Shown: positions 7,004 through 55,684, numbered from the stretch's first letter. The stretch: DNA of 64,000 bases from Guillardia theta CCMP2712 (GCF_000315625.1 NW_005434633.1:279867-343866); one strand, 5' to 3'. Translations and numbers: made by a program. Notes: generated by a model from the letters alone, not told the origin.

Positions 7004-10000
7004 ATGGCTCATCAAGATCGCAATGGCGACGAGGAGTCTGCGACTCGACATCCCCTCCTCCCCTCCCTCTCTTCCTACTCTCGCTCAGTTTCTCCTCCTC
7101 CCAGCTCATACAGTGCACATTGCTCTTTCTTCCCATCTCTACTATGTACGCCAAGGAACTTGAAACTGATTTTTTCAGACCTCCGTAAAAAGTCCGTAGC
7201 AGGATCTTTCCTGAAATTTCCTGCTTCCTGTGCAATATCGTTTCAGAACTCGTATCTGCACAGATGTGCTAAAGGCAAATATTGCAAAATCTCGACAGGA
7301 TCGATCCTGTTCTTTTTGTTGCTGATGGTTGAAATTGTTGGCGGCAGTTTTGCTTCTACTTCCGTTGTGAAACAGCCCTCGGGTGGAAATGCGTCTGATG
7401 TTCTAGGATCGTTTGAATTGAGCGTAAGCGCCGAACTGTTTCAAAAAAAAAATCTCACAATCAGAGCACAGCTCTTCAAAAACAGTGAACCAGCAAGTTT
7501 GTTGAAGGGAAATCGAGAAATTCTACTCACGAGTCAAAACGTGACATTCACCGATCTTGTCGTTTATTTCAACGATGGATCAAAGTTTTCGCTCAAATTC
7601 TTTGCCATGAATTGCTCATCAGTTGTTCTGATAGCAGAAAGCAACCTTTTCAGTATCCTTCCCGGGTACCTAGAATTAGTCGAAGCACCCCATGTCGTGA
7701 TTATTGGACTGCCATTCGATCTTGCTGTAGGTACATATGACAAAGCGAATCGATTACTGCACTACTCTACAAACACTCGAATGACACTAGATCTCAACGA
7801 TAGTGATGGCGGATTTCTGGGTTGCCTCGAATTAGAAGGAAACTGTTTGGAAAGTTACACGATTGCCGGGATTGCAAAATTTTCTGGATTGATCGTCTAC
7901 GGTCAATGGGACAACAGATCCTCTATTTCAATACTAGTATGGCATGAAGACAATGTTTCCTCTCTATACATTCAACTAAATTTCTCTCTGCACAATTGTT
8001 CGTTCCACGTCTGTCCTCCAGGTCAGTATTTCGAAACTCATTCGCAATTGGAAAGTTCAATCCTATCTGGATCCTGCATCATTTGTCCAGCAGGTTCAAT
8101 TTGTCCAGAAAATTCTACTGTCGTGATACCATGTCCAAGTGGAACTTTCTCTCCAAACGAAGCTGAGTTTGACTTCCAAGCTTGCATTAGATGTTTGGAT
8201 GGAACCTACTCAATTGCAGGTTCCACATCCTGCTCTGTTTGCGAGGCTGGTCACTTTTGCAAGGATGGAGTAAGGAAGAGATGCTCATTGGGAACGTTTT
8301 CTTTCAATAATTCTGTGTCATGCCAACCCTGTCCCCCTGGTCATTTTTGTGCTAGCTCAGCAATCCAGCCGATGCTGTGTTCCTCAGGACAATTTTCGTC
8401 TGGAAATCAATCAGAGTGTCTAGATTGTCCGTGGGGTACGTATTCTGAAGGTGGCTCGTCAGCCTGCCACTTTTGTCCCCTTGGACAATTCTTTGACCAA
8501 TCTTCCTGCAGTGAGTGTGCGGTTGGTCATTTCTGCAATGGAATTGAAAAGATTCAATGTCCAGTAGATCATTATGCGAATGGCACTCACGCCACAACAT
8601 GTCTGCAATGTGAGAATGGGACTTTTTCATCATGCGGATCTTCAGCATGCAGCGCTTGCACGGATGGCAGTGACCCAGACTACAGGTGCACGATTTGCAG
8701 ACCAGGTTACTTTTCAAGTGACGGCAAGCCTCCTTGCGAACCCTGCCCAGCTGGTTTTGCTTGTCCAAATACAACTACAGTCGTTTCATGTCCAGAGGGG
8801 TATGTTTCCTCTTCCATGTCAGTTTCCTGTACTCCCTGCCCTCGGGGATCAGCTTGCCCAAATGTCAGTTCTATTGATACAATTCAGCCTTGTCTGGATG
8901 GTTCTTTCTCCCTAGGTGTCTCATCGACCTGTTCACTGTGCCCAGCAGGTTTTGCTTGTGAATATAGAGGTAATGTGCCTGCAAGATGTGCAGCTGGGAC
9001 TTGGTCCCGTGAAGGACAAACGACATGTGCCATATGCCCCATGGGATTTTTCTGTGACCTTCTTCACTTAGAACCAACTCCTTGCCCTCCTGGAACATAT
9101 TCCAATATCTCAGGACAGAAATCTGGAAGTCATTGCAGGATTTGCGACGCTGGAAAATATTTTCCTGCTTACAATGCAACCACTTGCATATCTTGTCCAT
9201 CAGGATATAGTTGCCCAACGGCAACAGCTGTAGGATCAAGCTGTGCAAGTGGACAGTTTTCTGTGATTGGTCAGGGGATTTGCCTGCAGTGTCCTGCGGG
9301 CTACAAATGTCCCTCGTCAGATCTGCTTCCGGTACAATGTGAAGAGGGTTACTTCTCTGCTGAAGGCGAAATATATTGTCATATTTGCCCATCTGGATTC
9401 TCGTGCAATCCTGTATTTCCAAGTGCAGGACCGATTCCATGTCCAACAGGCACATTTTCTTTTTCAGGAAGTACTGTTTGCGAGGACTGTCCACCCGGCT
9501 ACTATACAAGTATTGCATCAAATTGCTCAGAGCACGGTCAAGGAGCATCGAATTGCACTATTTGTCCTCCTGGTCACTACTGCGCGAATCATTCATTGCC
9601 AGCACGTTGCCCCCCTGGGAAATATGCACAAGGAGGTGAGCAGACATGCTCAGAGTGCATTGCCGGCTTTTTCTCTCAAGAGGCTGCAGAGAACTGCACT
9701 CCATGTCCAGCTGGAGAATACTGCTTCTCAACGAATTTACTGCCTGAACCTTGCCCTCCTGGCACATTCAGCGAAGCTCTCGCCACCGCTTGTCGAGACT
9801 GTCCGCCAGGTCAATATTCCGTTACGAATTCTTCAAGCTGCAATTTTTGTGAACCAGGCAAGTTCTGTATCAATAGGTTACCACCCCAGAATTGCTCTGC
9901 TGGGTATTTTTCAGATTACGGACAAACCAACTGTACGGAGTGTCCAGCCGGGCAATACTCTGTATCTGGAGCCTCATCATGTGAAAGATGTCCTGCCGGT

Positions 10001-13000
10001 TTCTATTGCCCTGGAATTTGCGACTCTCCGGTTGCTTTTCCTCTACCTTGCGAGGCAGGATACTTCTCTGAATCTGGTTCCAGTACATGTCTGCTATGCC
10101 AACCTGGTCGTTTTTCGAATAGCAAGGCCAGTACATGTGAGACTTGTCCACCTGGCAGCTTCTGTATTGATGGGAGATCACTAGCGTGTCCCTATGGAAC
10201 CTTCTGCGAAGGAAATTGCTCCTCTTGCAATGTGTGCCCTCACGGAAAGTACATGCCACAAACTGGAAGTGCGGAATGTTTAGATTGCCCGATTGGAAGC
10301 TACTGTCCCAATGCATCAACTATTTGGCCTTTGAGTTGCCCTGCAGGGTACTACTCTGATCAAGGACAACAGGCATGCAATGCATGCGATGGTGGAACGT
10401 TTTCAAGTCAAGGGTCATCATCTTGCCACCAGTGCCCTGCTGGATACTTCTGTACACAAGCGTCCACGTATCCTTCAATCTGCTCTCCGGGCACATTCTC
10501 ATTGAACTCCTCGTCACATTGTCTCAATTGCGAACCTGGCTCTTTCTCAGATTCTGGTTGGGCGTATTGTGAAACATGTCCGGCAGGAATGCAATGCTAC
10601 AATCAGCAACATCCAGTACAGTGTAACCCGGGAACTTTTTCTGTTGGAAATCAAAGTCAATGCAAGCTTTGTCCAGATGGAACGTTTTCGGATGTGCATG
10701 CTTCCACATCGTGCATCGATTGTCCAAACGGACATAAGTGCTCGCGGGGCAATTTGAATCCTGAGCCTTGTGAGGATGGGAAATTTGCCCCCAATCGCTC
10801 CAGTGTCTGCTATACCTGTGCGGGAGGAACATACAATGCACGAATTGCACAAGAAGCATGCGATGTTTGTCCTGGAGGGTTCAGTTGCCCTCCCGGCTCC
10901 ACCGCGCCTGAACCATGTGCACCAGGGTGGTATTCTGTAGAAAATGCTGCAGCATGCTCTAGATGTGCGCAAGGGACCTACTCCTCTCTCGTGAGTACTT
11001 CTTGTTCGACATGCCCAGCTGGAATGTTCTGTCCTTTCGGTCTTGGTCCATTTGGATGTCCTCCTGGTTACTATTCCAATGGTTCGTCTACTTCATGCCA
11101 CGTGTGTCCGAGGGGCACGTTTTGTGAAGCAGGCTCTGATCTGCCTAAACTATGTCCCGCCGGTGAGTTCTGTGACAATATTCCCCAGTCATGTCCGCAA
11201 GGCTTCTATTCTTCGGCAGGCAGTGTGGATTGTACGCCATGCCCAGCTGGATACTATTGTCCCTCCACAGCTCTGCTGCCCATTCCTTGTGATCTCGGCT
11301 CGTTTTCTCCCGGTCTACAAACATCCTGCACTACATGCCCGGCTGGATTTTTTTGCTGTTCAAAAAATTGCACATTTTGCGATTCGAATGTATCCATGTT
11401 TACCCCACAGGATGTCTCGCCATATCAAGTCTCATTGTTACAATCATTTGATTTCAAGTACGTCAAGTGTTGGGATCGTTGCAGGCCTGGTACATACTCT
11501 TTGGGTAATCAAAGTGCATGCTTGGACTGCCCTGCTGGAATGGAATGTGCGGATGCAGCAAAATCTCCAGTCCTATGTCCAGATGGAAAGTTTTCAATGG
11601 GTCAAATGTCGAGATGTTTGACATGCCCACCTGGGTACGAGTGCAAAACAAAGATTTTGAATCCTACTATCTGTCCCATCGGCACATACTCACCAGGTCA
11701 GACGACAAGCTGCATTGTTTGCCCCTTCGGATCACAGTGCGATAATTACGGAATGTCTTACCCGGCTCGTTGTCCAGCTGGATTCTACAACTTGAATCCG
11801 AATAGCACTTGTACGATTTGCCCGCCAGGATATTTTTGTCCAACACCAGATTCGCGTCCGCAGGAGTGTCCAGATGGCTTTTGGGCTAACGCAGGTTCTT
11901 TGAAATGTACATCCTGTCAGGCGGGTTTCTATTGTCCATACAAAGAGTTGAACATTATGATCGCATGTGTTGAAGGTTCTTACTCATACGCTGGCCAGAG
12001 CCAATGTACCCCTTGCCCCGCCGGTTTCAAATGTCCAACAAGTTTGCCTGAGCCAATTGCATGCCCTCCAAATACATACTCAACAGGTTGGCAGAGCGAT
12101 TGCTATGCATGTCCTCCAGGATTCTTATGTTTAAATACATCATCCAATCCCATCCCATGTCTCAATGGAACATATCGGGTGGGATCAGGAGATAGTTGTT
12201 TGACATGCCCTCCAGGCTTTGAGTGCCCCTTTACTTTCAGATCTCCCGCACCTTGCTCCGTGGGATATTGGAGCTCTGGCAGTTTCACGGCATGTCAACC
12301 ATGTGACGCTGGTTTCCACTGCACTTTCCCAGCATCTCAGCCAAATGCTGACAAGGACCTTTGCCCCCCAGGGGGTTATTGCCCTGCAGGTTCTATTTTC
12401 ACTCCCTGTCCCGCCGGTACTTTCAATGAATTTCCTGGATCTAGAAGCATTGTCTTCTGCACCCCTTGCCCCCAGGGTTATTTTTGTCCCAGCGGAACGG
12501 TTTCCTACCATCAGAACATTTGTCCCAAAGGCCATGTTTGTCCAAATGCGACATCCTATGGAACACAATATCCTTGTCCTGCTGGTACTTTCAATGATGA
12601 AATTGGAAGTTTCTCGTACACTTCTTGCAAGACGTGCAGCGCTGGTTATTACTGTGCCGGCGCCTCTGAGATGGAATCATACCTGTGTCCGCAGGGAAGC
12701 TATTGCCCAAATGGAACCTCTTACCCAGTTCCTTGTCCAGCTGGAACCTTCCTGGACTCCAATGGAATGTCTTCTGTGACAGCATGCAAGACTTGTACAA
12801 TAGGTCATTTCTGTGTTGCAGGAAGTGGATCTGCAGCTCCTTGCCCGTTAGGGACTTTCTCACCTGCTGCTGGGAACTCGCAACAAGGTCAGTGTACGCT
12901 CTGTACAGCCGGGATGGCATGTCCGCGAGGAGCGCTGACTGCTCCGCTGGAGAATTGTGAGCTCGGTCACTATTGTCCTTCTGGTACCATCTACCCCACG

Positions 13001-16000
13001 CAGTATCCATGCGATGCTGGCAGAATGAATTTGAACTCCACAGATTTAGAGCAACGTTCTGACTGTGATGTTTGCCCTGAGAGATTCGCTTGTCAAACCG
13101 GAACGGGACATAGCAGCGCACCAATACAGAAATGTTCTCGAGGACACTTCTGTCCAGCTGGGACCAGCTTCCCAACTCAATATCCTTGTCCGCCAGGAAC
13201 ATTCACGGAAAGTAATGAGTTGGCCAGCGCTGCGGAGTGCACGGCTTGTCCTCCTGGGTTTTACTGCCTAGGTGGGGAGGCAAAGGTGAGTGGGCAATGC
13301 CCTACAGGATACTACTGCCCGACCAACACCGAGAGCAGCTTTCAATTTCCATGTCCTGCTGGCACTTACAACAGTCAGGTCGGCATCACATCAGTGGAAG
13401 GCTGTTTGGAGTGTCCTCCAGGAAATTTCTGCCTCCAGGGATCTTCGTTTGCGATTCCTTGCTTCGCAGGAACATATTCAAGCTCAAACAGAACTGAGTC
13501 AGCAGGAATTTCCAGCAGCAAGACGATGACTGTATCACCTTCCACCTTTCCATCATGTACTACATGTCCTGGCGGTTCCTTTTGTCCACGAGCAGAAATG
13601 ACTGAACCTATGCCCTGTGGACCTGGTCGCTTCTCGGATCTCGGACAAACGTCATGCGAGCTGTGTCCGGCTGGTCGTTTCTGTGAAACAATGTGGAACA
13701 ACTCAGCTGACCAGCTGGATACGAAGCAATGTCCAGCTGGTCTGTTTTGCCCTGTTGGGACCGCAATATTTCCCCAGTTCATACTTAATAATTGCAGCGG
13801 AGGAAATTATTGTCCCCGAGGGACGCCAATTCCAATTCCATGTCCTGAAGGCACTTTCATGAGCAACAAGGGAGCTAAAAACGTGACTGATTGCCAAGTC
13901 TGCCCGCAAGGATATTTCTGTCCTTTGGGTTCCAGTGCATGGAAGTATAACCTTTGTGCTCCGGGCCATTACTGCCCGGCCGGTTCCTCAAATTCCTTTC
14001 AAGAGCCCTGCCCGGGTGGGACTTATCGCTCCGAGCCTGCGGGAACTGACAGGTCAGACTGTGCCCTCTGCACAGCTGGTCTGTTTTGCCCGGAAGGGAG
14101 CTCCATGGGAGACGAATGCCCTATTGGAGCGTTTTGTCCCGAAGGAAGCGCAGTGCCTGAATTGTGTCCTCAGGGTACGTTTGGAGACTATCCCAGTCTT
14201 CAAAACCTTTCGATGTGCACTCCATGCCTACCAGGAAGGTTTTGCGATCAACCAGGGCTGATAGAACCAAACGGAGTTTGCTCTGCTGGTTATTACTGTC
14301 CCGTGGGATCTTCGTCGGCTACACCTTTGAACTTTTCTTGCCTTGAGGGTGGATACTGCCCCGAGGGTGTAGCTTACCCTATTGCGTGCCCGCCTGGTAC
14401 TTACAATCCTGCCATTTCGTCGAAACGGCTTCTTGATTGTCTCTCTTGTCCGCCTGGTATGTACTGTGACGGTGAGAGAAACGAGCAGCCCGACGGCTAT
14501 TGCAAGGCTGGCTTTTTCTGTACTGAAGGATCTAGCACTCCTGTACCATTTGAATCTAGCTCTGGAGATATTTGTCCGATGGGACACTTTTGCCCTGAAG
14601 GATCGCACGTACCCTTACCCTGCGCGCCTGGTTCTTTTGCTGCTCGGGTAGGGCAGGAACAGTGTACCCCATGTCCAGCGGGATATGTTTGTGCAGGGTA
14701 TCAGCAAGTTTCCCCACGATCGTGTCCTGTTGCACATTACTGTACAGCAAATTCATCAACACCTGTACCGTGTCCAGCTGGATCTTACAGCAACAGAACT
14801 GAGTTGACATCTGAATCCGAGTGTTCATTATGCCCACCAGGATTCGCTTGTACAATTGAAGGGTTACAAGCTCCAGATGTGGTTTGCAACCAATCATGGT
14901 ATTGTCAATCAGGTGCAATCTTTCCGTGGGGTAAATATGACACTTTGACGTCGACTGGCCGTCATTTAGTAGAAGCATGTCCAGCAGGGCACTACTGCGT
15001 CACCGGAGCCAGCGTCCCAACGCCTTGTCCTCCGGGGACATACTGCGAGGGCGGGGACGCACAGCCGGTACCATGCCCAGCGGGGACATACAACATGGAG
15101 GAGATGCAGACGAGCTGCAGGGCGTGTCCGGCAGGGTACCTGTGCTATCCGGGGGGAGTGGTGGACTACTCGAAAGGCAGCTACTATGCTGCAGAGGGCT
15201 TGTATGAATGCGCAGATCCGAGCGGAGGCATCTTCATAGGTCAGGATACGCTTCTAGAGGGCGATCTGGGTAACGTGCACACAAGCGTAGACATGATGGG
15301 GTACCTGATTGTCAGCGGCAGCTTGCGGACTGCAGCTACCGGAGTCGGGAAGTATGACGTGTTCGTGTCGAAGCTCGACATGGGAGGGAAGCTTCTTTGG
15401 ACGACCCTGATAGGCACACCCGACGACGACAGGGCAGAGGGGATGACGGTAGGGGAGGACGGGAGCGTCTACGTGATGACAGGCAGCTCGGGAGGCTCAT
15501 TCCTGACGAGGGTCGGGGGATGCGGGAGAGAGGAGTGGAGGATACCGATGGGAGCAGATGCTGGGCCAGGGACGGCAGCGCATCTGACGCATCAGGGCGA
15601 CAAGGTGTACGCGTCATGGACGGACATGGAGAACAGGTCAAGGCTGGTGCAAGTTGGGGTGAATGGGAGTGTGTACTGGAATCGATCTTTGGGGGGGAAT
15701 CAAAGCTTTGTGCGAGGGGTTGTGTGTGACGGAGAGGGAGCGATCTATGTTGTTAGGGAGATTTCTAATGGAACTGGTGTTTTCCCTTTGATTGGCAATA
15801 AGGTTTCTGTTTCCAAATATGATTTTAATGGCGATTATGTGTGGAATACCTTTTTGGCATTGAGGAGTTTAGCTCTGTACAATCATTTCTCATGGATCCA
15901 TGATACATTGATGTTCGTTGGAAGTTTTCTAGTTCCGATTGATATCTCCAACCTTGACACCAAGGATATAGTTGTGAATGTATCACAGCTCGGCGATGTG

Positions 16001-31000: not shown

Positions 31001-34000
31001 TTATATTCTGCTTTCAAGCAAAAAGATTTGCCCAATTCCAAGTTCATATGCCAAACTCTTCATGATTCCTTGATTGGATGCGAGAATCGTGACTCGAATT
31101 TGACCGTGGATTCATTTGAGTTTTGCGACCAATTCAGAATAGCTCCAACGCAATGCTCGACCTCTCCTGAAGCAAGCAAAACCTGCTGTTCATGTGGTGG
31201 TGGGAAGAGAGATTTTGCAATCTGCGAAATTTTGACTGAAACTATCTTTGGAAAATGTGCTTCAGGATATTACTGCATAGAGGGATCGCCATCTCAATAC
31301 CCTCTGGCGGAATCGAATGAGGGGAAGGGGGACATTTGTCCGCCTGGCCATTACTGTCCTACCGGCACAACACGTCCAATAAAGTGCCCAGATGGTCAGT
31401 ATCAGACTGACTTTGGCAAAGACTATTGCCTAGACATTCCAGAGGGCTATTTCAGTCCAAATGACACAGCAACTTCAATCGAAATTTGCCTGCAGGGCCA
31501 CTACTGCCCCCGAGCGCATATCCTGTCACCTATCCCATGCCCCAGTGGTACTTACGGCAACATTACTGGAATGACAAAGCTTGAACAATGCTTTGCTTGC
31601 CTCCCAGGGATGTATTGTCCTGCTGAGGGCCAAGTATTGCCACGTGGACTTTGTTCGATGGGCTTCTTGTGCAAAGGTGGCGATGTCAACTGGAATCTGA
31701 ACTTGTCATACCTCTGTCCAGCTGGATATTATTGTCCTGCGGGAAGTGCAGACCCAACGCAATGCCCCCCTGGGACATATAATGACAAATTGGGAAGAGG
31801 AAGCGTTTCGGATTGTCTGCCATGCTTAGAAGGGCGGTACTGTCCGACAGCTGCCGTAGCCACAGATAATCTTACGGAATGTGATGAAGGTTTTTACTGT
31901 CCACAAGCCTTTGGCAGTTTCACTATGTCGCAGATCATCAAAAAGTTTGAAGCGCCCCTGTGGTGCGGCGTAATGGACTCTTTGAACGTTTTTGATATTC
32001 CCGTTGGAAGTTCTGTAGCAGCCCCACAGCAATACATCTGTCCAGTAGGCCACAAATGCCCCAAAGGTAGCGGACAACCTATCCTTTGCTGCGACTCGAC
32101 TTCCTCAGAGTACGGCAGCTGTGCCCTCTATCAACCTGGAAAGGGAAGCAATTCTTGTTATAAGTGTCCGGGCGGTCGGCATTGCTTGCAGAAAGCTGTT
32201 GGGAGCAGTATGGTCGTCAAATCCATTTTGTGTCCACTTGGATACTACTGCGAACTTGGGAATGTTCCCAAGATATGCCCTCCTGGGACTTACGGGAATC
32301 GAGAAGGATTGTCAGTGATAGAAGAATGCATTCCATGCATGCCTGGATTCTTCTGCAACAACGGAAGTATTCAGGGTCCATGCGAAGCTGGATTCTGGTG
32401 CAGTGGAAAAGCACAATGTCCGAATCCAGGAGACAATTCAACGTGTTCGAAAGATGTGATTGGAATCCAAGGTGGTACGCTCGTGAATGATTTGTGTCCG
32501 CCTGGCTCTTATTGCCCTTCTGGAACAAACGCACCGATTCGTTGCCCTGCCGGCACTTACATTGAACGATCCTCACCGTCGTATCCTGGCAGGTATTTGT
32601 GCGACTGCTTGGATTGTGAAGCAGGCAGCATGTGTACGGAAGGCACATCGGCCCTTGAGCCGTGCCCTAAAGGATTCTTTTGTCCAAATTCACGGAATTC
32701 GTCACAAGATTATCTTCGCGGAGCTTGTGTCGAATCCAAGAGCTCCTGCTCCATTCATCCAATGCCAGAACCATGCCCTCCAGGCACCTATCAACCTGAT
32801 GTCGGGAAGAAGAGCGCGGATGCCTGTCTCATTTGCGGTAATTTCTCATTTTCAGTGGATTACAGAGGCTACTATTGTCCAAACTACAATTCATCAAAAC
32901 AAACCATCTGCCCGGCAGGTCATTACTGTCCTGTCGGTATTGAGGATTCGGTGCCCTGTCCTGATGGATACTACTTGGAGCGAACGGGAGGTCGCTCAAT
33001 TGATGACTGCAAAGTCTGTCCAGGTGGAGCTTACTGTCCGAATGGAACTGTCACACCGCTTACATGCGACGAAGGGACGTTCTGTGTGAACGGATCGTCG
33101 TCCCCAACCATTTGCCCAAGTGGATACTATTGCCCAGCCAAGTCGGACATGCCGATACCCTGTCCTCCGGGAACCTTTTGTATAGCAGGGTCTATATCGC
33201 CACACATTTGCCCTCCTGGTACCTTCTGCCCGTGGAGATCTGAAGCAGCGTACCTATGTCCACTCGGAACATACGCTGAACCCAATGCGACGATTAACAG
33301 GACTTCTATAGAGGCCGCGTGTAGCCCGTGCGCCCGTGGATATTTTGGGGCGGATCCTACCAGAACTTCATGTGAACTTTGTTGGCCAGGGTACATGTGT
33401 TATGGAAGTACCATCCGTGGTGATCCAGTGAACGCTACGTCTGATCTGGGAGAAATATGTCCTGCCGGATATTATTGTGAGAGGGGATCGTACAAAGCAA
33501 CTCCTTGTCCAGCAGGAACATACAACAAAGAACCAAAGCAAGGCTCTTCTGCAGCGTGTATTCAATGTCCACGAGATTCTTTCAACGACAAACCAGGGCA
33601 AGCCGCATGCATTCCGTGCGGAGGGAGCGCTGTATCCAGAAATGACAGTCTGGAGTGTCAGTGCAAAGGTGCAAATCGCGTCTTTCAGCCATTCGATAGC
33701 GCCTGCCGTTGCATAGCTGGTTACACAGTCTACAACGGTCTCGGCGAAGCTCAACCCGATCAGGCAACAGCCGATGGAGTGACGGACTGTGAAGCGATCG
33801 TCATGCCGAGGTGCGGGCCAACTGAAATCAGGGGACCGTCTGGTGCTTGTGCAAGCTCGTGTCCTGATACATCTTGTGAACTTCCTCCTTGCTACTGCAT
33901 CAACGGAATAGACATCTGTAATAACACCTGTCCAAATTACCAGATCGCTAAGGCTGAGAAGATCCAGGTAAAAATCAACACATGCTTTGTTTCTCCTGAT

Positions 34001-37000
34001 TGATTTGAATTGCAGATTGACTCCACAGTTGGTACAGCTCTGACATGCACATGCCTCTGTCGAAACGACTCAACATTTCAGGAATGCGTTGACCCAAACG
34101 AGTTTCCAGCGCAGAAAACTTACGAAATCATTGTGGACAAAGCAGGAAATAGCATTCTCAAAGTAATCACGAGCACAGAGAACAGAACTTACTTTCTTGG
34201 CACAAAAGTACAAACCGGATCATCGGACACTTCACAAGCTACATTTTTGAGCACTTCAGGTGACGGCTTCACGGGTGTCCTCGACATACCAACGACATAT
34301 TTTGATGACCTGGGACTTCAGGAATGTGTGATGAACACTGATCAAATTTGTATCGAGAAGCAGGCCCTCCGTTCAAAGACATCTTGGAAAGATAAAGTTC
34401 AAGACATGCGAAGAAATAGCCTCCGAGCGACCGCTGCAGCATCGTCTGTGATTGGGGTACAATCACCCATCATGTGCTTGAAAGCGGGAGCAGGTGTCAT
34501 GTGGACGATCTCAGGGTCACTATCTGATTCCAGCGTGCACTATCCTGTGTATGTTTCGGACTCACTTCTCAACACCAATCCAACGTTTGATTACGGTGCT
34601 TTCGTAACTTTGAAAGACCAAATCTTGCGAGGAAACAATGTCTCGACCTTCTTCTTTCAGTTCGACACTCCAGGAATCTACGTTTTCAGAGACTCCGTGA
34701 CACCTACCAAGCAAGCGGTCATTGGTGTGGTTGCTCCTGTTCTTGACTGTCCAAAGGCATTTGAAACGAATCAAATTCAACCCATGTCGATTGATATCCT
34801 GAAATCGTTTCCAACATCTTCAAAAGATACTGTGATCAATCCAGATTACAAATTCATAACGATAGTGGCATTGTCTATCCTAATCATTTTCGTTGTAGCT
34901 GTGTTTTTGAACGTTCTCAGGAACCAACTAGGTTGGGGCAAGTCTCTGTCTTCAAGGCCCAAGTTTCGAAAACATGGTTCCCAACAGGACTACTTCTCCT
35001 TGGCTACAAGAAAGGAACGGTCGAGCGTTGGGAAGGAAGTTGGAAGTATCAAGACTATGGACGCAAGTTCTGAAGGTACCGAGCTGATGGGATTCAGTGT
35101 GAGCATGCTGTACGACAAGTTGGAGGATCAAAATAGCCTTGTGTCGGAGCAACTAACTCAGCAAAAGCAAGACATCCGCGAATTTTACGAAAAAGTGACG
35201 CGTGAGACGGCAACGCTGCGTGGTTTGGTTGATAGGAATCGCAATATGGGTTTCACTGAAGATGAATTACACAGAGCCAAGGAAAGAAAGAGTTTAATAT
35301 TGGAAGAAATCCACCGTCGAAAACAGATCGGGCTCACAGGCACTGTCGTGTTTGAAGAAGCCATGAAATCTATCTTTACAAAACCCGAAACAATTGAAAT
35401 CCTGCAAAAGCTTCAAGAGAGTTTGACGAAGCTCAACGAAAACTATTTGGCAGAAGCACAGGGTCCAGACGGTCATATCTCCAAATCAATCATAGAGGAG
35501 CTCGATGCCGCTGTTCGACAAAACATTCCCATCTTACCGAATTTTCAACCATTAGATGAAAATGGCGCAATACTGTTGTCTGGCTCCCGGCAACCATTTG
35601 CGAAGAAGGACCTTTTCGACTCGGAAGGCAATTTGAAGATCATTCCAGCAGTCATGGAGATCGATCGAGCGACCAAACTTGTCAAACCAGTTAAGGGGCT
35701 TGAAATGATGACTGGAAAAGGGCAGATCGTCCCAGTACCAGAGAATTGCTGTATTCACCCAATCTCAGGAAAGGTGATCCCGATGGAAGGCAACGTCTAT
35801 TTCGATCCGAGAAGGCGGTGTTTCAACTTTCTCTCGTGCATGGACTTCAAATCGCTGGTGGCTGGCCCATTGCCGTACGTTTGCAATCGTCAGAACCCGA
35901 AGTCAATGTGCTACCCCGATGCTGCTGCTTACATTCACCTGATTGCCAAGGAGGATAGAGGATTTCCCCTGAATGAGTCTCGAACGATGTTAGATCCTTT
36001 CACGGGGACTCGAGTGCCTGTCTTGGGTATTACCTCAAACCTCGCCACTGGGGAACTGCACGCAGTGGGAGGGGCGGTTCTTGATCCGGTCACTAATCTA
36101 CTGAAGCCTATACGTATAGGAGACTTGATGGAGGATCCGGAAACTAAGGAGGTATGCATGATCACTGGTGTGATGATCAGTGAAGAAACTTGCAATGTGG
36201 TGCCGCTGGGCTGCAGGTAATCATTAGCGTTTCTCTTCTCTCCGTATGATTTGACGAAAGTTTGTTTTTCTGCAGGAGAATAAATGAACAAGGGGTTGTT
36301 AAACATCTTGTCCCGGGTTGTGATGTTGTGGACATCTTTTCTGAAGAATCACTTGTATTGGGCTCGACTATTGCAAACCCCATGAACATCAAACATGTCA
36401 TTCCATCAGGCAGCCACGAAATATATGGTTTGCGAAATGCGAAACTTGACTTGGAAAAGGATATGTTAGATCGTCTATCAAAATTGAAAGGCAAAATATC
36501 TGCAATACAACCAAGTGAGGTCAAGTCCCTGCATAACATGGCATCCAAATTGATGGATGTAAACAGAAAGCTCATTGACAAAGCCTCAAGTTGGAGTGAG
36601 CTCGTGCTACAGCATCACAATGAAATGCTGGCTATCGCAGAAAATGGAGGCAAGATTGGAATGAAGTACGATTTTGTACTAGCTGAAGACCTGCCACTCT
36701 TGATCGGCTGCACATACTACGACGATACAAGTCGCCATGAGATTGTTGTCCTTGATGTTGAAGTGGATGAAGCCACTCAGCTGTTCGAAGGTCTAGGATG
36801 TACGATCATTGATCCGATCTCAGGCAATGTCGTGCCAGCAGTATTTGGTGGAAGAATGAAGGATCCGCATTCAAGGAATATAATTCCCGTAAATGGCATT
36901 AAACGCGATCCTAGCACATTTCAAGTTGTGCCTCAGTCGAATCTTTCGTCACCTGGGACAGAGACCGAAGCAATCAGCAGCAATGACAGTTTCAGTCTGA

Positions 37001-40000
37001 TCAGTGAGCTCCTGAAGAAACTCGCCGAGAATCAAACAAGCTCTGCAGCGCTTCAGAGTGTGATGCAGAAACTTCAAAACAAACCAGCTGTCGCTAAAGC
37101 TCAGCCCTATTCTGATGATGAGATGGAGGAATCCGAGTACGAAAGTGAAGGCACGGAGTCTGCGATCGACGTGGACGAGACCTCGGCTCCTTCTTCTGTG
37201 TCGGAGATTGAAATCGATGCCATAGACCCCGACGAAAAGTTCGTCAGCGATCTGAGAAAAAAAGGTCAAAATGTGTTGATGATCCTCTCTCAAATCGTTT
37301 GCGACGACCCCGAAGCCCTTGCCAAGGCTGTGCAAGAGCTTGAAAACTATCATTACTCCAGGGTTGAAGAATTCATCCACAGACTGAAGAAGCACTTTGG
37401 GCAACGAGAGGAAGCCAATAGGCTGATTGCAGAAACTTCTGAAACTGAAATTTCGGGCCAAGTGAGATCGATTCAAAATGAAATCGTGAAAGAAGTTTTT
37501 GAGAATGACAAACAGCTGGTAAAAGAATTGTTCGAGCGTTTGCACCTCGAAAATTTGGAGTCTCTTGTGAAAAGCCGGAAGAACGATCTCCTGCAAGAAT
37601 TCAGTGGAGAGCATAGCGTTTCAGCAGGAGACAAGACAAGATACAGAATCGCCAATGAGCTCAATCGCAAGTACGTCGAAGAGTCGGACCGTATGCGAAA
37701 CGAAAGTTTGAATCAGTTCTGGAACTTCCTAGAGGAAGCTGATGACGGTCTTATCACAACCATAAAGCATTCCCAGATGAGCAGAGAGAACCTGATGGAC
37801 GCGGTCAGGTCGCACGGAGAAAACATCAACACCTTCTACGACTCCATGGAGAAAGATCTTGAGGATCAGCTTGAACAGCTTCTGATGGAGAAGGAGAAGG
37901 CAGTCTCAAAGAAAGTTGCCATCCTCGATGCTCACATCCACGGTCGTACAGGAAAAGCACTCTGGAAGAAGGTAAAGCTCGTTTTCCAGCTCACAAGGTT
38001 GAAGGGAATGAAGCAGCAAGACACTCAGCAGATCCTGCCGGACGAGAGTCGACTGAAGGAGTACGAGCAGGCGCTAAATGAGTTCACCGAGTCGAAACTG
38101 CAGTCCTTCGAGGAACAGATCGAGGGTGAGATACAGGGGAAGACGTCTCAATATGATGCAGAATTCTTGAAGAGACTGGAAGGGAGTGAAGTTGAAGACC
38201 CTGAGGCGATCAAAGAATTGTTGCAGAATCACGATCTAGAGCGACAGAAGTTGCTGGAGAGATTGAACATGGACAAGATGTCTCAAATGGAGGAGTTGAA
38301 GAAGCAGCTCGAAGAAAGGAAGACAAAGAAGATGATCAAGCTCAAGGCTGAAATTCATGAGAGAGCAGCTCAACAGCCCGACAGCCTAAAGACAGAAGAA
38401 GGCTCCAAGCTCTTCCAGATACAGTCAGATCTCCTCATAGAGCAGGAGATCGAGGTCACTAAGCTTGAAGCAGCTCTGACTCGACAAGAATGCTCTGAGA
38501 TGTCCGAAGTTCGCAATCACAACTTGTTGATCTTCGAAGCTGAACAAGCGACTCTCAAGCAGGAAGCAAACGAACGCATCCGGGCGGCCTCCAGTGATTC
38601 AGAGAGAGCGAGGCTGATTGATGAGCATGAGATACAGTTGGCAAAACAGACTCTCATGCAAAATGTGGCCAAGGGCAAGAGCGAGGAGGAGCTGAGGAAT
38701 CGTCTTTCAGAGCGCAGAAAGAAAAGGGAACAATTCCTGCAGCTGCAGCACGAGAGGCAGAACGAGATGGTAGTCTCTGGCAAAGAAGCCGAGTCTATTG
38801 CGAGCGAGGTCAACCATTTCAAGAAGGAAACAGCTCTGGTGTTGAAGCACGAGCAAGAGAGAGCAAACGAGCTGCGGGAACAATTGCTGCAGGCCCAATC
38901 CGAGATCCAGATGCTCAAGGATGAGCTGAAGCTGCACGTGAAGAAGCAAATCGAAGAGCAGGAAAAGAAGATCGAGCGCGACCTCAATGCGTCCTCTGAC
39001 GAGAGGCGCGAAGAGTTGCTCCGACAGCACACACAAGACATTGAAAACCTGCGCAACATGGAGCAAGCCGACGCCGCTCGTCAACTTGCAAACTTGGAGA
39101 AGCATCTTCAATCGAAGAATGCAAAGAAGAAGAAGAAGTTGGAACAATCGCATGCAAAACAGATGAAAGAACTCAAGACCCAGCTTGAAAACGAGAAAAT
39201 TCAACATCTGACTGCAGACGAAATCAGCTCATCTGTGGAAAAGGAATTTGCAGACAAAGAGAGGATTGAAGCAGAAAACATCACCATGAAGATGGAAGAA
39301 CAGAAGAAGAAAGTGATAGCTGAAGCTAACGAAGAATTCATGATGAAGATCAAAGACGATCTAAGTGAAGACGAGAAGCAGAGGCTTATCTCTCAACATG
39401 AGGAGAACTTAGCCAAGTTGTCCAAGTACATCGACAAGGAGAATGCACGAAGACAAGAAGCTCTGAAAGCACAACTTCTTGAAAAACGGAAGAAGAAAGA
39501 AGAGAGAATGATGGCAAGAAAGCATCAGAAAGAAAAACAAGATGAAATTGTCAACAAGCAGCGACAAGAACTGGATCAACTCGAGAAGGAACAAGAGAGG
39601 GAGAGAAAAGAGCAACTGAAAAGATTGGAGGAAGAGCTCCAAAAGGAAAAGGATGAGGAGCTACAGAGGATTCTCGCAGCAGAAGCGAACGTTCCTGCTC
39701 CTGACGTGCAGGAATCAGAGAGCAAGATCGAAGAGGGTGACATTCCAGGTTCAGTGTTGAGCCAGGACACAGAGAAAGAAAAACTGCTCGAGGAAGCACA
39801 CAACAAAGAGAATACCATAAGGAATCAAGCTTCTCTTGACCGTCAGAAGCAGGAACAAGATTTGCAACAGAGACTGGAAAAGAAGAAAGAGAAGAGGATG
39901 TTGGAGTTGAAGCGGAAACAGGAAGCAGAGATGGAACAGAAGCTTTATGAGCAAGTCGAAGAAGCGACCAAGATGCTGGAGTTAAGCTCAGCCGAGCAGA

Positions 40001-41854
40001 AGGCTGAGAACGAGGCAGAAGCAGAAGAAATGGAAGACGCAGGGTTGGACCTCTACGTTGACAAGACCGTTGAAGACGATTTCGAGAAGAGACTTGAGGA
40101 GGAGCGTCAAAATCTACAGCACGAGCTCGAGAAGATGAAGGAGGAGCAGGAGAGGATGAAGCGCGAAATCCTCGAGAAGCAAGAGCTGGAGATGAAGAAG
40201 CTGGAAGAAGAAATGCAGAAAGATCAGGAAGCGTTCGAGCAGGCCCTGATGGCTGAGCAGCAAAAGAAAGCTGAAGAGCTCAAGCAAAGGAGGCAGGAGA
40301 TGGAAAAAGAACTGCAGATGAAGGCAGACAGCGCGACTGCAGAGGAACGAGATCTGCTGATTCAGCAGCACGAAGAGAAGATGAAGATGCTAGAACAGGA
40401 GGAAGCCATGAAGAAGATGTCGACAGAAGAGGAGCTGAAGGCGAGAGTTGCTCAGCGCAAGGAGAAGAAGAAGAAGTTGCAGCAGAAGCGTGCAAACGAG
40501 AGCTTGCAGCTGCTCTTGACGGAGCAGAAAGAGAGGGAGCATGAGCTAAAAGAAATCCTACGACAGAAGCAGGTCGATGACATGATTGCGATGGCCCGAG
40601 CTGGGAATTTAGAAAATGCGATTCACCTCTTGCAACAGTTGCACAGCAAAGAGCTCGAGGAAGAAGACGTGAGCTTTGCCGAAGAATATGCAAAGAAGAT
40701 GGCATCGGCTCAAGATGAAAAGCATTCTGAAAACCTGGAGCAAGATTTGAAAGCGACAAGAGAGAAGAGGTTAGAAGAGCTGAAAGCTAAACATGAGAAG
40801 GAGATGTCCAACATTCAGAGCATGAAGAAGCGGGAATCAGACCGAGATGTGCTCATGAAGAAGCTAGAACAAAGAGCTTCTGAGTTCAAGAAGATGGAGG
40901 ACGAGTTCCGAGCTCGAATGGAAGCGGAAGTTGCTCGAATAGAGGAGGAAAATGAGCGTCTTTACCAGAAGGAATTGGAGGAGATCAAAGGAAAGCGCGG
41001 CAAGATTGCATCAGGGCATAGAGGAAGCTCCCGCTCCCAAACTCGTGAGAGCATTCAGAAGGAACACGAGCAAGAGAGTTTGTCATTGTCGTCGGCGTTA
41101 AGTGACGAGCAGCGGAAGCAAGAGATCATACTGAAGAGGAAGATCGAGCAAAGGCGGCAAGAGAGGAAAGCTACTTTTATCAAGATATGCACAGATCTGT
41201 TTCATGAGATCCGAGATGGCAAGAGTTTGGATTCTCTGAGTTTCGACAAGTTGACCAGCTCTGAGGTCGATTCTGCCAAGAAGATTCTGGAGAGAGGTAA
41301 GAGACGGTACGAAGAGAAGAAGAAGTTGCCAGTTGGCAAAGCTGCTGAAAAGTGGATGAAGAAAGCTTTGAACCGAAGGCTCTCAGTCGATCTCCTCGCG
41401 GAAGACGAGCGCAGGCAAAATCAAGACGAGGCAGGCGGCTCGTCTCAGGTCGTTAAGCGTTGCCTCCATCTTTCATGTCTGATCGCTGACGTCCCGCAGC
41501 TCCAGTCGAGCTTCATGCTGCACAGGCCTGCACAAGACGAACAGGTGCATGCGCTGACCGCGACCTTCTTTCAACTGACACTCGTCACTCTAGTTCCACG
41601 ACGAACGAGCACAGCTGGCGGAGCACGAGAGGAAGGCAAGGTTGGCCAGGGAGCGAGCAGATGCTATAGCTAGGGAGATCGAGGGCTTGAAGAAGTCTCA
41701 GATTCAGCAGGGCCAGAGCGACGCGATCAAGATCTCTCAGGACGAGTTCATGGAGATGCTTCGGGAATCAAACCTAACTACAAAGCTGCTGGAGGTCGAG
41801 AGGCTGCTCCGGCTGCTGGTGGAGAAGAACAGCAAGTCCAAGCCGTCCAGCTAG
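7004..41854 (+). CDS. Giant (~11,550 aa) single-pass membrane protein with a Cys-rich GCC2/GCC3 (ephrin-receptor-like/TNFR-like) repeat ectodomain, SBBP-like beta-propellers and a long charged helical cytoplasmic tail
   Basis: ORFs 7004-34003, 34010-36220, 36262-41673 and 41642-41854 are joined in frame by GT-AG introns at 33968-34015, 36217-36275, 41449-41499 and 41545-41593. There are hundreds of CPxGxYC/CxxCPxG motifs, a hydrophobic segment near the N-terminus (ILFFLLLMVEIVGGSFA), a TM helix FITIVALSILIIFVVAVFLNVL at ~34853-34918 and an E/K/Q/R-rich C-terminus. The true start codon is uncertain. Confidence 0.9.
14978..30075 (+). repeat. Intragenic array of 8 mosaic super-repeats (periods 2634, 2709, 1593, 1590, 2715, 1593, 1593 bp)
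   Basis: Anchor module CPAGHYCVTGASVPTP...VVDYS starts at 14978, 17612, 20321, 21914, 23504, 26219, 27812 and 29405. All periods are multiples of 3, and shared cassettes are near-identical at the nucleotide level. Confidence 0.97.
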
Positions 41855-41863
41855 CCCAGGTTT

Positions 41864-54460: not shown

Positions 54461-55684
54461 TCAGGTCTGCATGTACGGATGACCCTCGTCATCACTTCCC
54501 CTAGAACTGTGCCACTTCCAAACAACAAGTACAATGATTCCCAGCAAGAAAGATCCTCCTCCCACTGCCCACAAGATCGCAATCCCATCCGTGTTGGCCA
54601 GCTGGATAGGAGGTAGGTAAGGAGGCTCTTTAGGGAAGTAGTAGCATCCAAGTGGACGAGGAACAGTACCGTTGACATACGGTTGTACCTTAGAGACATA
54701 AGCATCACAGATAGCCTTTCCCAGAAGGAAGATGTGAGTCCTGTTAGGCGAATTGAGCACTTTGCCATCAACTACTATCCACGGACTGGACTGAATGGGA
54801 GGAAGGAAAGTTTTTGTCTTGTACAAGTTCCTCAGTAGGAGTTCCGAGGCCCGTTTGCTATGCATGCAATCTGCGATCTTCTTGACCGACATGCCGCCTC
54901 CAAACTCGTCAATGCACTGTAGAGCAACCTCAGACGGCATCCCCTGACAGACATGGGACGAGGAGGAGCCTGTATGAGCAACAGAATCGATAAGAGGCAC
55001 TTCGCCGTCAGCACACGTTCTGACAATGATGCAACTAGAAACAGGGAACCAATCTTCAAGCGCGGGATAAGCATCCTCGACACATGAGAGGATGGCGTTA
55101 CCGACACATTCGGAGGGTCCATGCTCGCAGAAAAATTCAGGGAAACCGGACTCCAGTGTAATATTCACATCCTCGGTCGAGTTCGATCCATCCACTTTCA
55201 CCACGGAGGGTACCTTAGGGTCCATGTCCTTCACCAGTGTATTTCCCGATGGATACAGGTGTAGCCTGACGATATCCTTCATTCCCGGGGCCTCGATGAC
55301 AGGCATGAGCACCCATTCTACAAACATCTGACTCGCCCTTCCCTGCGACTCCATGTAGACATCCACGTCAACATGGTAGTCGACTCCTTCAGGCGGTGAA
55401 AATGAAACATGCCGCAGAGGAATGACTTTCTTGCCTTGTGCGCTTGTAGTGTCCGCCAAACTGACCTTTGTCTTCCCCTTTGAAACGAATTTTCTCTTCA
55501 AGTCCGCGAGAATTCCTGACGTGGAATTGGTGACGCTCAACTTCGCCACACTTGCCACAACAACATCAACCCCATCATTCGGTATCCATGCAATGGCAAC
55601 TATCAAAAATGCCACCAAAATGGCTGAACCAAGGATTCTCGCCTTTCGTGCATGAATATTCCTAGACTCCCACGCACTTACCAT
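54461..55684 (-). CDS. GILT: GILT (gamma-interferon-inducible lysosomal thiol reductase)-family protein with a degenerate active site and a C-terminal TM helix
   Basis: GILT signature CEHGPSECVGN, plus VDVYMES, LHLYPSGN and PWIVVDG in the expected order. N-terminal signal/anchor and C-terminal TM (IAILWAVGGGSFLLGIIVLVVW). ATG at 55684 is followed directly by GTAAGT, a possible 39-nt in-frame intron. Confidence 0.8.
   Translation of the reverse strand: MVSAWESRNIHARKARILGSAILVAFLIVAIAWIPNDGVDVVVASVAKLSVTNSTSGILADLKRKFVSKGKTKVSLADTTSAQGKKVIPLRHVSFSPPEGVDYHVDVDVYMESQGRASQMFVEWVLMPVIEAPGMKDIVRLHLYPSGNTLVKDMDPKVPSVVKVDGSNSTEDVNITLESGFPEFFCEHGPSECVGNAILSCVEDAYPALEDWFPVSSCIIVRTCADGEVPLIDSVAHTGSSSSHVCQGMPSEVALQCIDEFGGGMSVKKIADCMHSKRASELLLRNLYKTKTFLPPIQSSPWIVVDGKVLNSPNRTHIFLLGKAICDAYVSKVQPYVNGTVPRPLGCYYFPKEPPYLPPIQLANTDGIAILWAVGGGSFLLGIIVLVVWKWHSSRGSDDEGHPYMQT

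What the first reader, a model, noticed from the sequence alone, without database searches (positions are those of the whole stretch)
7004..41854. Hidden ~11,550-aa single-pass receptor-like giant protein, split across four ORFs
Seen in sequence: four short GT-AG introns (48, 59, 51, 49 nt) join the ORFs with correct phase, giving 34,644 coding nt. The architecture is N-terminal hydrophobic segment, two possible Ig-like modules, ~8,600 aa of Cys repeats, a juxtamembrane domain (HYPVYVSDSLLNTNPTFDYGAF, ~34538-34605), one TM helix and ~2,250 aa of cytoplasmic tail. Established: GCC2/GCC3 Cys repeats occur in alveolate cysteine-repeat modular proteins (CRMPs, linked to regulated exocytosis of rhoptries and mucocysts) and in the Chlamydomonas mastigoneme protein MST1. 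Inference: this is a >1.2 MDa surface filament or sensor connected to an intracellular scaffold, possibly flagellar or extrusome-triggering. Automated annotation would probably fragment it.
Basis: partly seen in the sequence, partly recalled or inferred. Interest (0 to 1): 0.85.

Follow-up and report, generated by a model that had tools for sequence, protein, structure and literature searches.

The report
Giant single-pass surface protein gene
The four open reading frames are one real gene of the alga Guillardia theta, encoding a membrane protein of about 11,500 residues from an ancient, almost unstudied family found from protists to vertebrates.

Summary
The four + strand ORFs at 7004-41854 join through short GT-AG introns of 48, 59, 51 and 49 nt, giving exactly 34,644 coding nt.

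Junctions 1 and 2 are well supported:
- Two paralogues in the same genome have unrelated introns at the same positions and phases.
- Against a 96.5%-identical relative, changes fall mainly on third codon positions in every exon. The only indel lies in intron 1.
- In a Hanusia transcript protein and three other ORFs, the end of exon 1 abuts the start of exon 2.

The last exon carries a C-terminal motif shared across the family. The exact borders of introns 3 and 4 and the true start codon remain unverified. RNA reads were too few to help: five reads, none across a junction.

It is neither a CRMP (nine TM helices) nor MST1 (no TM). It belongs to the family labelled "CAST multi-domain protein", which has one paragraph in Woo et al. 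2015. I find that family in most eukaryotic supergroups, including vertebrates, always without a known function.

Its signature is a membrane-proximal beta-sandwich, the TM helix and cytoplasmic helices. A second cytoplasmic beta-hairpin module matches no known fold.

The scan holds one sibling note on the same stretch (s1-446783) and none on the paralogues.

The parts
7004..7297 (+). First in-frame ATG (GCCATGG context) plus 98 codons upstream of the hydrophobic segment. It is doubtful whether this is coding sequence; the true start is unresolved.
   Evidence: Homology to the paralogues begins only at about aa 96. C44 has a Met directly before its signal peptide. C28 has an unrelated 67-aa extension.
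7298..7354 (+). N-terminal hydrophobic segment: a signal peptide or signal anchor.
   Evidence: Kyte-Doolittle 2.02 over 19 aa. It aligns with the signal peptide of the C44 paralogue.
7355..8008 (+). Cys-poor N-terminal ectodomain (aa 118-335), fold unknown.
   Evidence: 27% identical to the C44 paralogue. No significant Pfam match.
7004..33967 (+). Exon 1: 26,964 nt, 8,988 codons, mostly GCC2/GCC3 (Ephrin_rec_like) Cys repeats.
   Evidence: Open frame. Pfam PF07699 at E = 1e-37 and 1.6e-17. 9.4% Cys, 285 CPxG motifs and 156 N-glycosylation sequons.
15212..16312 (+). Cys-poor insert 1 (about 367 aa), probably a beta-propeller.
   Evidence: Cys-free stretches. Weak SBBP and FG-GAP matches.
17846..19021 (+). 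Cys-poor insert 2 (about 392 aa), probably a beta-propeller.
   Evidence: Atlas feature score 0.96 to clusters carrying SBBP or PQQ_2.
23849..24913 (+). Cys-poor insert 3 (about 355 aa), a repeat copy of insert 2.
33968..34015 (+). Intron 1: 48 nt, phase 0, GTAAAA..CTGAT..TTGCAG.
   Evidence: It contains an in-frame TGA. Both paralogues have an unrelated intron at the same position. It holds the only indel and shows 10.6% divergence against L012. The flanking exons abut exactly in P0005, P0003, P0002 and P0004.
34016..36216 (+). Exon 2: 2,201 nt. It holds the last Cys-containing part, the juxtamembrane domain, the TM, conserved helices and module B.
34460..34807 (+). Membrane-proximal beta-sandwich (exon-2 aa 149-264). 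It includes the HYPVY...NTNPxFDYGxF motif at 34538-34605.
   Evidence: AlphaFold2 pLDDT above 90 over this part. Invariant C, P, D, C columns. Weak cupredoxin or Ig-like fold matches, with TM about 0.5-0.57 by target.
34853..34909 (+). The single transmembrane helix.
   Evidence: Kyte-Doolittle 3.22. The model shows a helix at exon-2 aa 278-305.
35099..35341 (+). Conserved cytoplasmic helices (consensus DLExFxVxTLYDKLEDQ...).
   Evidence: Alignment A1. Model helices at 263-343.
35555..36216 (+). Module B: a cytoplasmic beta-hairpin repeat domain with motif (D/H)PxTGxxVPIxG. It continues into about the first 50 codons of exon 3.
   Evidence: Alignment A2. pLDDT 92 and pTM 0.85. No fold match: Foldseek TM below 0.2, VIA best Z 2.4, Atlas TM at most 0.30, PDB sequence profile none. 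Mapping.
36217..36275 (+). Intron 2: 59 nt, phase 2, GTAATC..CTGCAG.
   Evidence: Frame 2 to frame 1 shift. Same position and phase in both paralogues. 10.2% divergence against L012. Exons 2 and 3 lie within about one residue of each other in P0004 and P0151.
36276..41448 (+). Exon 3: 5,173 nt, the cytoplasmic tail.
   Evidence: 28% identical over about 1,700 aa to both paralogues. Third-position bias in this frame against L012.
36688..36933 (+). Second, partial copy of module B (exon-3 aa 138-219).
   Evidence: Search with the A2 profile, E = 1.3e-13.
38224..40926 (+). Stretch of about 900 aa nearly free of Pro and Gly and rich in E/K/R/Q/L/A, coiled-coil-like.
   Evidence: Composition profile. 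Composition-biased similarity to the tails of the distant giants.
41449..41499 (+). Candidate intron 3: 51 nt, in frame, without a stop. Not verified.
   Evidence: GT..CTGAT..CTGAC..CCGCAG. Its in-frame translation is unlike the tail. The C44 paralogue also appears to have two short introns before its last exon. A 48-nt alternative, 41452-41499, fits equally.
41500..41544 (+). Exon 4: 45 nt, 15 codons. It exists only if intron 3 is real.
41545..41593 (+). Intron 4: 49 nt, GTGCAT..CTGAC..CTCTAG. It shifts frame 1 to frame 2. Exact borders are predicted.
   Evidence: A frame shift is required to reach the conserved last exon. Both paralogues have a short intron and a frame change before their last exon.
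41594..41854 (+). Exon 5: 86 codons plus TAG. The family's C-terminal motif lies at 41735-41827.
   Evidence: The motif recurs near the C-terminus of P0003, P0013, P0033, P0058 and P0150 and in both paralogues.

Best explanation
Gene model (shown). This is one nuclear gene of Guillardia theta, about 34.9 kb with five exons, one of them 27 kb long. It encodes a membrane glycoprotein of about 11,500 residues. It belongs to the family that databases label 'CAST multi-domain protein', 'zonadhesin-like', 'SCO-spondin-like' or 'uncharacterized'.

Function (inferred). The protein works as a long surface filament tied to the cell cortex.
- Outside: well over a hundred disulfide-bonded GCC2/GCC3 modules form an extended, glycosylated rod. 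Three propeller-like inserts and an N-terminal domain are the likely binding sites.
- At the membrane: a compact beta-sandwich sits on the bilayer, and a single helix crosses it.
- Inside: conserved helices are followed by one and a half beta-hairpin repeat modules of an undescribed fold, an acidic linker and about 900 residues of coiled-coil-like helix. The coiled coil would pair two chains.
- At the C-terminus: a short conserved motif probably binds a conserved partner.

My best guess for its role is adhesion or mechanical sensing between the cell surface and a cortical scaffold, at about one chance in three.
For: Single gene.
- Colinear homology of exons 1-3 to two paralogues in the same genome, on C44 and C28.
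- Introns at the same position and phase in all three genes, with unrelated intron sequences.
- Substitutions by codon position against a 96.5%-identical relative, L012: exon 1 0/0/12, exon 2 11/12/51, exon 3 4/1/19. Both introns diverge by about 10%, and the only indel is in intron 1.
- Exact abutment of exon 1 and exon 2 in the Hanusia phi transcript protein (1335|1336) and three other ORFs.
- P0003 carries the Cys repeats, exon-2 and exon-3 equivalents and the C-terminal motif in one 3,019-aa ORF.

Family.
- 667 hits to exon 2, 324 of them at E <= 1e-10.
- The same architecture in Fabomonas, Chromosphaera, Kipferlia, Diphylleia, Vitrella, Hydra and vertebrates.
- The Stylonychia 'CAST multi-domain protein' has module A at E = 6e-57.
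- The published description matches.

Structure.
Against: - No junction-spanning RNA. Only 5 reads landed on exons 2-3 in about 0.76 Gb sampled, and none of the contig sets covered the stretch.
- The borders of introns 3 and 4 and the start codon are predictions.
- The length depends on the copy number of 99-100% identical repeats in a draft assembly.
- Nothing here tests the function. No partner, location or phenotype is known for any family member.
- The coiled-coil call rests on composition only.
Confidence: 0.85

Rival explanations
1. The protein is a flagellar-surface or extrusome-triggering receptor, working like CRMPs or mastigoneme anchors although it is not their relative.
For: - It shares the GCC2/GCC3 repeat type with CRMPs and MST1.
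- Every named taxon with a member has flagellated cells at some stage.
- Woo et al. report it in coccidians but not in Cryptosporidium, Theileria, Babesia or Plasmodium. From my own knowledge, those four lack flagella or build them without intraflagellar transport.
- The zebrafish gene whose name the Betta member carries was higher in testis than in ovary, listed beside ift74.
Against: - The family is reported absent from Tetrahymena and Paramecium, which have cilia and extrusomes.
- It has one TM against nine in CRMPs.
- MST1 has no TM and is limited to green algae.
- Nearly all eukaryotic lineages have flagella, so the taxon list has little power.
- The zebrafish link rests on an automated gene name that I did not test.
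Confidence: 0.15
2. The locus is a decaying or silent relic, or its size is inflated by assembly, so no 11,500-residue protein is made.
For: - RNA signal is very low.
- There is 15 kb of 99-100% identical in-frame repeats, which assemblers can miscount.
- The start is uncertain.
- The C28 paralogue has assembly gaps, 213 N.
Against: - A 27-kb frame without a stop.
- A clear purifying-selection pattern in three exons against a close relative.
- All family modules are intact.
- Relatives of 5,000-8,000 aa are the rule, and the C28 paralogue spans about 37 kb.
Confidence: 0.06
3. The ORFs are separate genes: a secreted Cys-repeat protein, a small membrane protein and a cytoplasmic coiled-coil protein that happen to lie in a row.
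For: A prokaryote-style gene caller reports three genes on the relative's contig. No RNA read crosses a junction.
Against: - Exon 2 has no ATG before codon 40 of its frame, and the ORF list opens ORFs 2 and 3 with TTG.
- The same order, strand, spacing and phases occur in two paralogues.
- The polypeptide is continuous in transcript-derived and other ORFs of relatives.
- Module B runs across the exon 2/3 junction.
Confidence: 0.02

Closest known systems
'CAST multi-domain protein' family (Oxytricha and Stylonychia annotation; one paragraph in Woo et al. 2015, eLife, PMC4501334)
   Same: It has Cys-rich extracellular repeats, a single TM and a conserved helical or coiled-coil cytoplasmic region. 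It shows direct sequence homology to a protein so labelled: module A at E = 6e-57 by profile and 4e-24 by single sequence.
   Different: - The Guillardia gene is larger than most members, about 11,500 aa.
- It has propeller-like inserts and module B, which only about a third of the sampled members carry.
- The paper lists chromerids, Oxytricha, stramenopiles, choanoflagellates and coccidians. I also find the family in Cryptista, CRuMs, ancyromonads, metamonads, a euglenid, an ichthyosporean, Hydra, tunicates, hemichordates and vertebrates.
Apicomplexan and ciliate cysteine repeat modular proteins (CRMPs)
   Same: Large surface proteins with Ephrin-receptor-like Cys repeats and long cytoplasmic C-terminal tails.
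   Different: CRMPs have 9 TM helices forming a conserved core. This protein has one TM, and no CRMP appeared among the named hits to exon 2. There is no evidence here for a role in regulated secretion.
Chlamydomonas mastigoneme protein MST1
   Same: An extracellular filament built partly from ephrin-receptor-like Cys-rich domains.
   Different: MST1 has nine Ig-like folds, six sushi-like domains and a glycosylated polyproline helix. It has no TM, is anchored through PKD2, and its homologues are limited to green algae.
Eph receptors and other animal proteins with Ephrin_rec_like / TNFR-Cys repeats (SCUBE, SVEP1, ELAPOR)
   Same: The same Pfam repeat, PF07699, in the ectodomain.
   Different: Those proteins carry one or a few repeats. 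This one has no kinase or any other Pfam domain in the tail. The automated names 'zonadhesin-like' and 'SCO-spondin-like' on vertebrate members reflect only Cys-rich composition.

Membership tests
CAST multi-domain protein family (as described by Woo et al. 2015) | [quoted passage not shown] | tested here: met
   9.4% Cys in exon 1. PF07699 at E = 1e-37 and 1.6e-17.
CAST multi-domain protein family (as described by Woo et al. 2015) | A single transmembrane domain | tested here: met
   One segment with Kyte-Doolittle 3.22 at 34853-34909, modelled as a helix. The N-terminal hydrophobic segment is a signal peptide or anchor.
CAST multi-domain protein family (as described by Woo et al. 2015) | [quoted passage not shown] | tested here: met
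   Conserved helices at exon-2 aa 362-442. About 900 aa of coiled-coil-like composition. No dedicated coiled-coil predictor was run.
CAST multi-domain protein family (as described by Woo et al. 2015) | Sequence homology to a protein carrying that annotation | tested here: met
   Stylonychia lemnae 'cast multi-domain protein' (P0240): module A profile E = 6.3e-57, direct E = 3.9e-24 to exon 2, with its TM inside the module. The paper's own examples, OXYTRI_15408 and Cvel_3066.t1, were not on hand.
CRMP (cysteine repeat modular proteins) | Nine transmembrane helices forming the conserved core | tested here: not met
   Only one TM after the repeats. CRMP architecture taken from PMC9815656.
CRMP (cysteine repeat modular proteins) | Ephrin-receptor-like Cys-rich extracellular domains | tested here: met
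CRMP (cysteine repeat modular proteins) | Required for regulated secretion (rhoptries, mucocysts) | not testable with these tools
   This needs genetics.
MST1 mastigoneme protein | Nine Ig-like folds, six sushi-like domains, a polyproline II helix and no TM | tested here: not met
   A TM is present and no proline-rich helix is seen. MST1 architecture taken from PMC10602792.
Eph receptor tyrosine kinases | Cytoplasmic protein kinase domain and SAM domain | tested here: not met
   No Pfam family in exons 2-3. Only SAM_NCD1 at E = 0.085 in exon 5, below its cut-off.

The most novel reading that the evidence does not exclude
The family dates back to the last common ancestor of eukaryotes. It is a giant surface-to-cortex receptor whose cytoplasmic (D/H)PxTGxxVPIxG hairpin module is a genuinely new protein fold. 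Its conserved C-terminal motif docks an equally ancient, still unidentified partner. Its patchy losses (human and mouse apparently, Tetrahymena, Plasmodium) would then track one specific cell-surface structure or behaviour.
Probability: 0.3. Interest if true: 0.7.

Novelty: new member of a known kind. Interest (0 to 1): 0.5.

Why it matters
- **Gene model.** The work gives a corrected, evidence-backed model for one of the largest genes of a model cryptophyte, and for its two paralogues.
- **Family.** Scattered 'zonadhesin-like', 'SCO-spondin-like' and 'uncharacterized' giants from protists to birds, fishes and some mammals turn out to be one family. It has a definable signature, module A, which has no Pfam entry.
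- **Open questions.** A protein this large, kept under purifying selection across most eukaryotic supergroups, has no known function. It also contains a confidently predicted domain with no structural relative.
- **Where to test.** Tractable members exist (zebrafish, chicken, Xenopus, Toxoplasma or Eimeria, Oxytricha), so the question can be put to experiment.

Tried and rejected
- **RNA reads.** It gave 5 reads and no junction reads. Three RNA-like contig sets gave nothing there.
- **3' end search.** A word-indexed search with the last 200 aa of exon 3, meant to catch a spliced transcript product, found nothing.
- **Pfam.** It gave nothing on exons 2-5 or on the post-repeat parts of four relatives.
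- **Solved structures.** PDB sequence profiles matched nothing real for either module.
- **Module B fold.** Foldseek, VIA-align and the Atlas found no relative.
- **Atlas feature search.** On exon 2 it gave only sub-threshold leads.
- **TRF.** It found no tandem repeats because the repeat periods exceed 500 nt.
- **Literature.** Searches on the repeat names and on giant or coiled-coil terms found no description other than Woo et al..
- **CRMP and MST1 membership.** Considered and rejected.
- **The intron-free C44 reading.** I first took C44's 2,622-aa frame as intron-free. It is a 48-nt stop-free intron that happens to read through.
- **Exons kept apart.** Every search, alignment and fold used single exons by reference, so the joined protein was neither folded nor searched.


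Full report
**1. What is in the sequence**

The + strand holds four consecutive open frames: 7004-34003 (8,999 aa), 34010-36220, 36262-41673 and 41594-41854.

- 33968-34015 is 48 nt and has an in-frame TGA.
- 36217-36275 is 59 nt and phase 2.
- 41449-41499 is 51 nt, in frame and without a stop.
- 41545-41593 is 49 nt and shifts frame 1 to frame 2.

Three of the four introns carry a CTGAY branch-point-like motif 14-21 nt before the AG; my pattern scan found none in intron 2.

The rest of the anatomy is also as described:
- Exon 1 is 9.4% Cys and matches Pfam Ephrin_rec_like, which is the GCC2/GCC3 repeat, at E = 1e-37 and 1.6e-17.
- Exon 2 has one strong TM helix at 34853-34909.
- Everything after the TM is Cys-poor.

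Nothing was searched or folded as a joined sequence.

**2. Is it one gene?**

RNA could not answer this. No read crossed a junction. Expression in that sample is therefore very low, and splicing remains unobserved.

Three independent comparative lines answer it instead.

(a) Paralogues.
- The window's genome is 87.1 Mb in 669 contigs. Earlier notes call it Guillardia theta, and the closest named relative I found is the cryptophyte Hanusia phi.
- It holds two paralogues, on contigs C44 and C28.
- The last 400 aa of exon 1 (about 50% identity), all of exon 2 (37-40%) and about 1,700 aa of exon 3 (28%) align to them colinearly.
- Both paralogues have a GT-AG intron at the same position and phase at junctions 1 and 2. 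The intron sequences and lengths are unrelated, while the flanking protein sequence is conserved.

(b) A close relative.
- L012 is a metagenome contig, 96.5% identical to the window over 33221-36668.
- Its substitutions by codon position are 0/0/12 in exon 1, 11/12/51 in exon 2 and 4/1/19 in exon 3, each counted in its predicted frame.
- The two introns differ at about 10% of sites.
- The only indel in 3.4 kb, a single base, lies in intron 1.

(c) Continuous relatives.
- In the Hanusia phi transcript protein, the end of exon 1 aligns to residues 934-1335 and exon 2 starts at 1336.
- The same exact abutment occurs in P0002, P0003 and P0004.
- Exon 3 follows exon 2 within about one residue in P0004 and P0151.
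- Module B also runs up to the last codon of exon 2 and continues into exon 3.

**3. The 3' end**

The last exon carries a motif of the type EEWxxLLxxSPLxxKLxxVExLLR. This motif recurs near the C-terminus of P0003, Fabomonas P0013, P0033, P0058 and P0150. It also occurs in both paralogues, where it lies in a terminal exon of about 80 codons, in a different frame from the main ORF and behind a short intron.

So exon 5 belongs to the protein, and a frame-shifting intron must exist. The 49-nt interval is the best candidate, but it is a prediction.

Intron 3 is optional by sequence. A 48-nt alternative fits equally well.

**4. The 5' end**

Homology to the paralogues starts at the hydrophobic segment, at about aa 96. 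C44 has a Met directly in front of a classic signal peptide. C28, like my gene, has an unrelated stretch of 67 aa (98 aa in mine) after the first ATG.

The start codon is therefore open. So is the question of whether the first hydrophobic segment is cleaved or acts as an anchor.

**5. What family it is**

An exhaustive search with exon 2 found 667 proteins, 324 of them at E <= 1e-10. Many are 3,000-7,800 aa long.

Named members come from:
- Hanusia, Diphylleia, Fabomonas, Chromosphaera and Kipferlia;
- Barthelona, Chilomastix, Entosiphon, Vitrella and Stylonychia;
- Hydra, Oikopleura and Saccoglossus;
- many fishes, frogs, reptiles and birds, and a few mammals.

Where the protein is complete, the layout is the same: signal peptide, thousands of residues of Cys repeats, module A containing the single TM, then a tail.

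Source names are 'hypothetical', 'uncharacterized', 'zonadhesin-like', 'SCO-spondin-like', 'TNFR-Cys domain-containing' or, in Stylonychia, 'cast multi-domain protein'.

That last label led to the only description I could find. An appendix paragraph in Woo et al. 2015 notes Cys-rich extracellular domains, one TM and a conserved cytoplasmic coiled coil. It also gives a patchy distribution. The Stylonychia protein has module A at E = 6e-57, so the Guillardia gene is a member.

It is not a CRMP, since CRMPs have nine TM helices. It is not MST1, which has no TM, has Ig-like folds and a polyproline helix, and is limited to green algae.

**6. Domains**

Module A:
- It was folded with 66 homologues.
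- It gives a confident beta-sandwich at exon-2 aa 149-264, with pLDDT above 90.
- This is followed by the TM helix and two long cytoplasmic helices.
- Its nearest folds are cupredoxin or Ig-like Greek keys, at weak scores. No copper-ligand set is conserved.

Module B:
- It covers exon-2 aa 514-733 and was folded with 42 homologues.
- It folds at pLDDT 92 and pTM 0.85 as an array of short hairpins with the motif (D/H)PxTGxxVPIxG.
- It has no structural relative. Foldseek TM is below 0.2. The best VIA Z is 2.4 over 48,161 chains, where orphan models usually still reach Z 7-8. Atlas TM is at most 0.30, and the PDB sequence profile finds nothing.
- That does not prove a new fold, but it is a good candidate.

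The rest of the tail and the ectodomain:
- A partial second copy of module B lies in exon 3.
- It is followed by an acidic stretch and about 900 residues of coiled-coil-like composition.
- Three Cys-poor inserts in the ectodomain give consistent weak beta-propeller signals.

**7. Function**

Nothing is known for any member. From the anatomy, I infer a long rigid glycosylated surface rod whose single TM couples it to a dimerising cytoplasmic tether. The tether would carry docking modules for the cortex, giving a role in adhesion or mechanical sensing.

The family is present in coccidians and absent from Plasmodium, Cryptosporidium and the piroplasms. A zebrafish gene name carried by a fish member was higher in testis.

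It also has hints against it. The family is absent from Tetrahymena and Paramecium. I rate that idea at about 0.15.

**8. Verdict**

The family assignment is corrected.

This is a new, very large member of a known but unstudied family. Other giant surface-protein genes, one of about 24,000 codons, are already noted in this genome, so size alone is not exceptional here.

The scan holds a sibling note on the same stretch (s1-446783, on the super-repeats). I found no note on the two paralogues.

Noticed in passing
window 14978-30075: Eight in-frame super-repeats with periods of 1590-2715 nt. Many segments are 98-100% identical, and G+C is about 0.65 against 0.46-0.53 in the rest of the same exon. 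This may reflect recent expansion or gene conversion, and the copy number could be mis-assembled. A sibling finding (s1-446783) already covers this.
   Followed up: partly
G000:C44:75417-99700 (+) and G000:C28:604700-567100 (-): Two full paralogues of the gene, about 24 kb and about 37 kb, with the same intron positions at junctions 1 and 2 and the same terminal-exon layout. C28 contains 213 N and duplicated segments, so its model is incomplete.
   Followed up: partly
L008 / G000:C44 about 94012-94059: The C44 paralogue's intron at junction 2 is 48 nt, in frame and free of stops. A naive ORF reading therefore runs straight through it, giving 2,622 aa and adding 16 spurious residues. Stop-free short introns like this can hide in other large Guillardia ORFs.
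   Followed up: yes
L013 (Logan SRR14578327 contig, 17.6 kb): An unidentified relative, 40-49% identical. It carries the exon-1 end, exon-2 and exon-3 equivalents and the C-terminal motif in one uninterrupted 3,019-aa ORF. A 2,292-aa ORF precedes it after a 143-nt gap. I did not determine whether the contig is genomic or from a transcript.
   Followed up: partly
window 54461-55759 (-): A 432-aa ORF with a GILT (lysosomal thiol reductase) domain, E = 2e-14. It is an unrelated neighbouring gene.
   Followed up: no
window 39800-42000 or 33500-33800: Ten RNA-like contig sets each hold about 5-10% of the sampled words of 33500-42000, yet three of them laid nothing on 33800-39799. Some transcript must therefore cover the flanks. 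It could be this gene's 3' end or a convergent neighbour starting near 41860.
   Followed up: no
vertebrate hits: Members occur in leopard, arctic fox and two bats, but no human or mouse entry appeared among the 82 hits. This points to lineage-specific loss in mammals. One frog entry also carries reverse-transcriptase domains, which is probably a model error.
   Followed up: no
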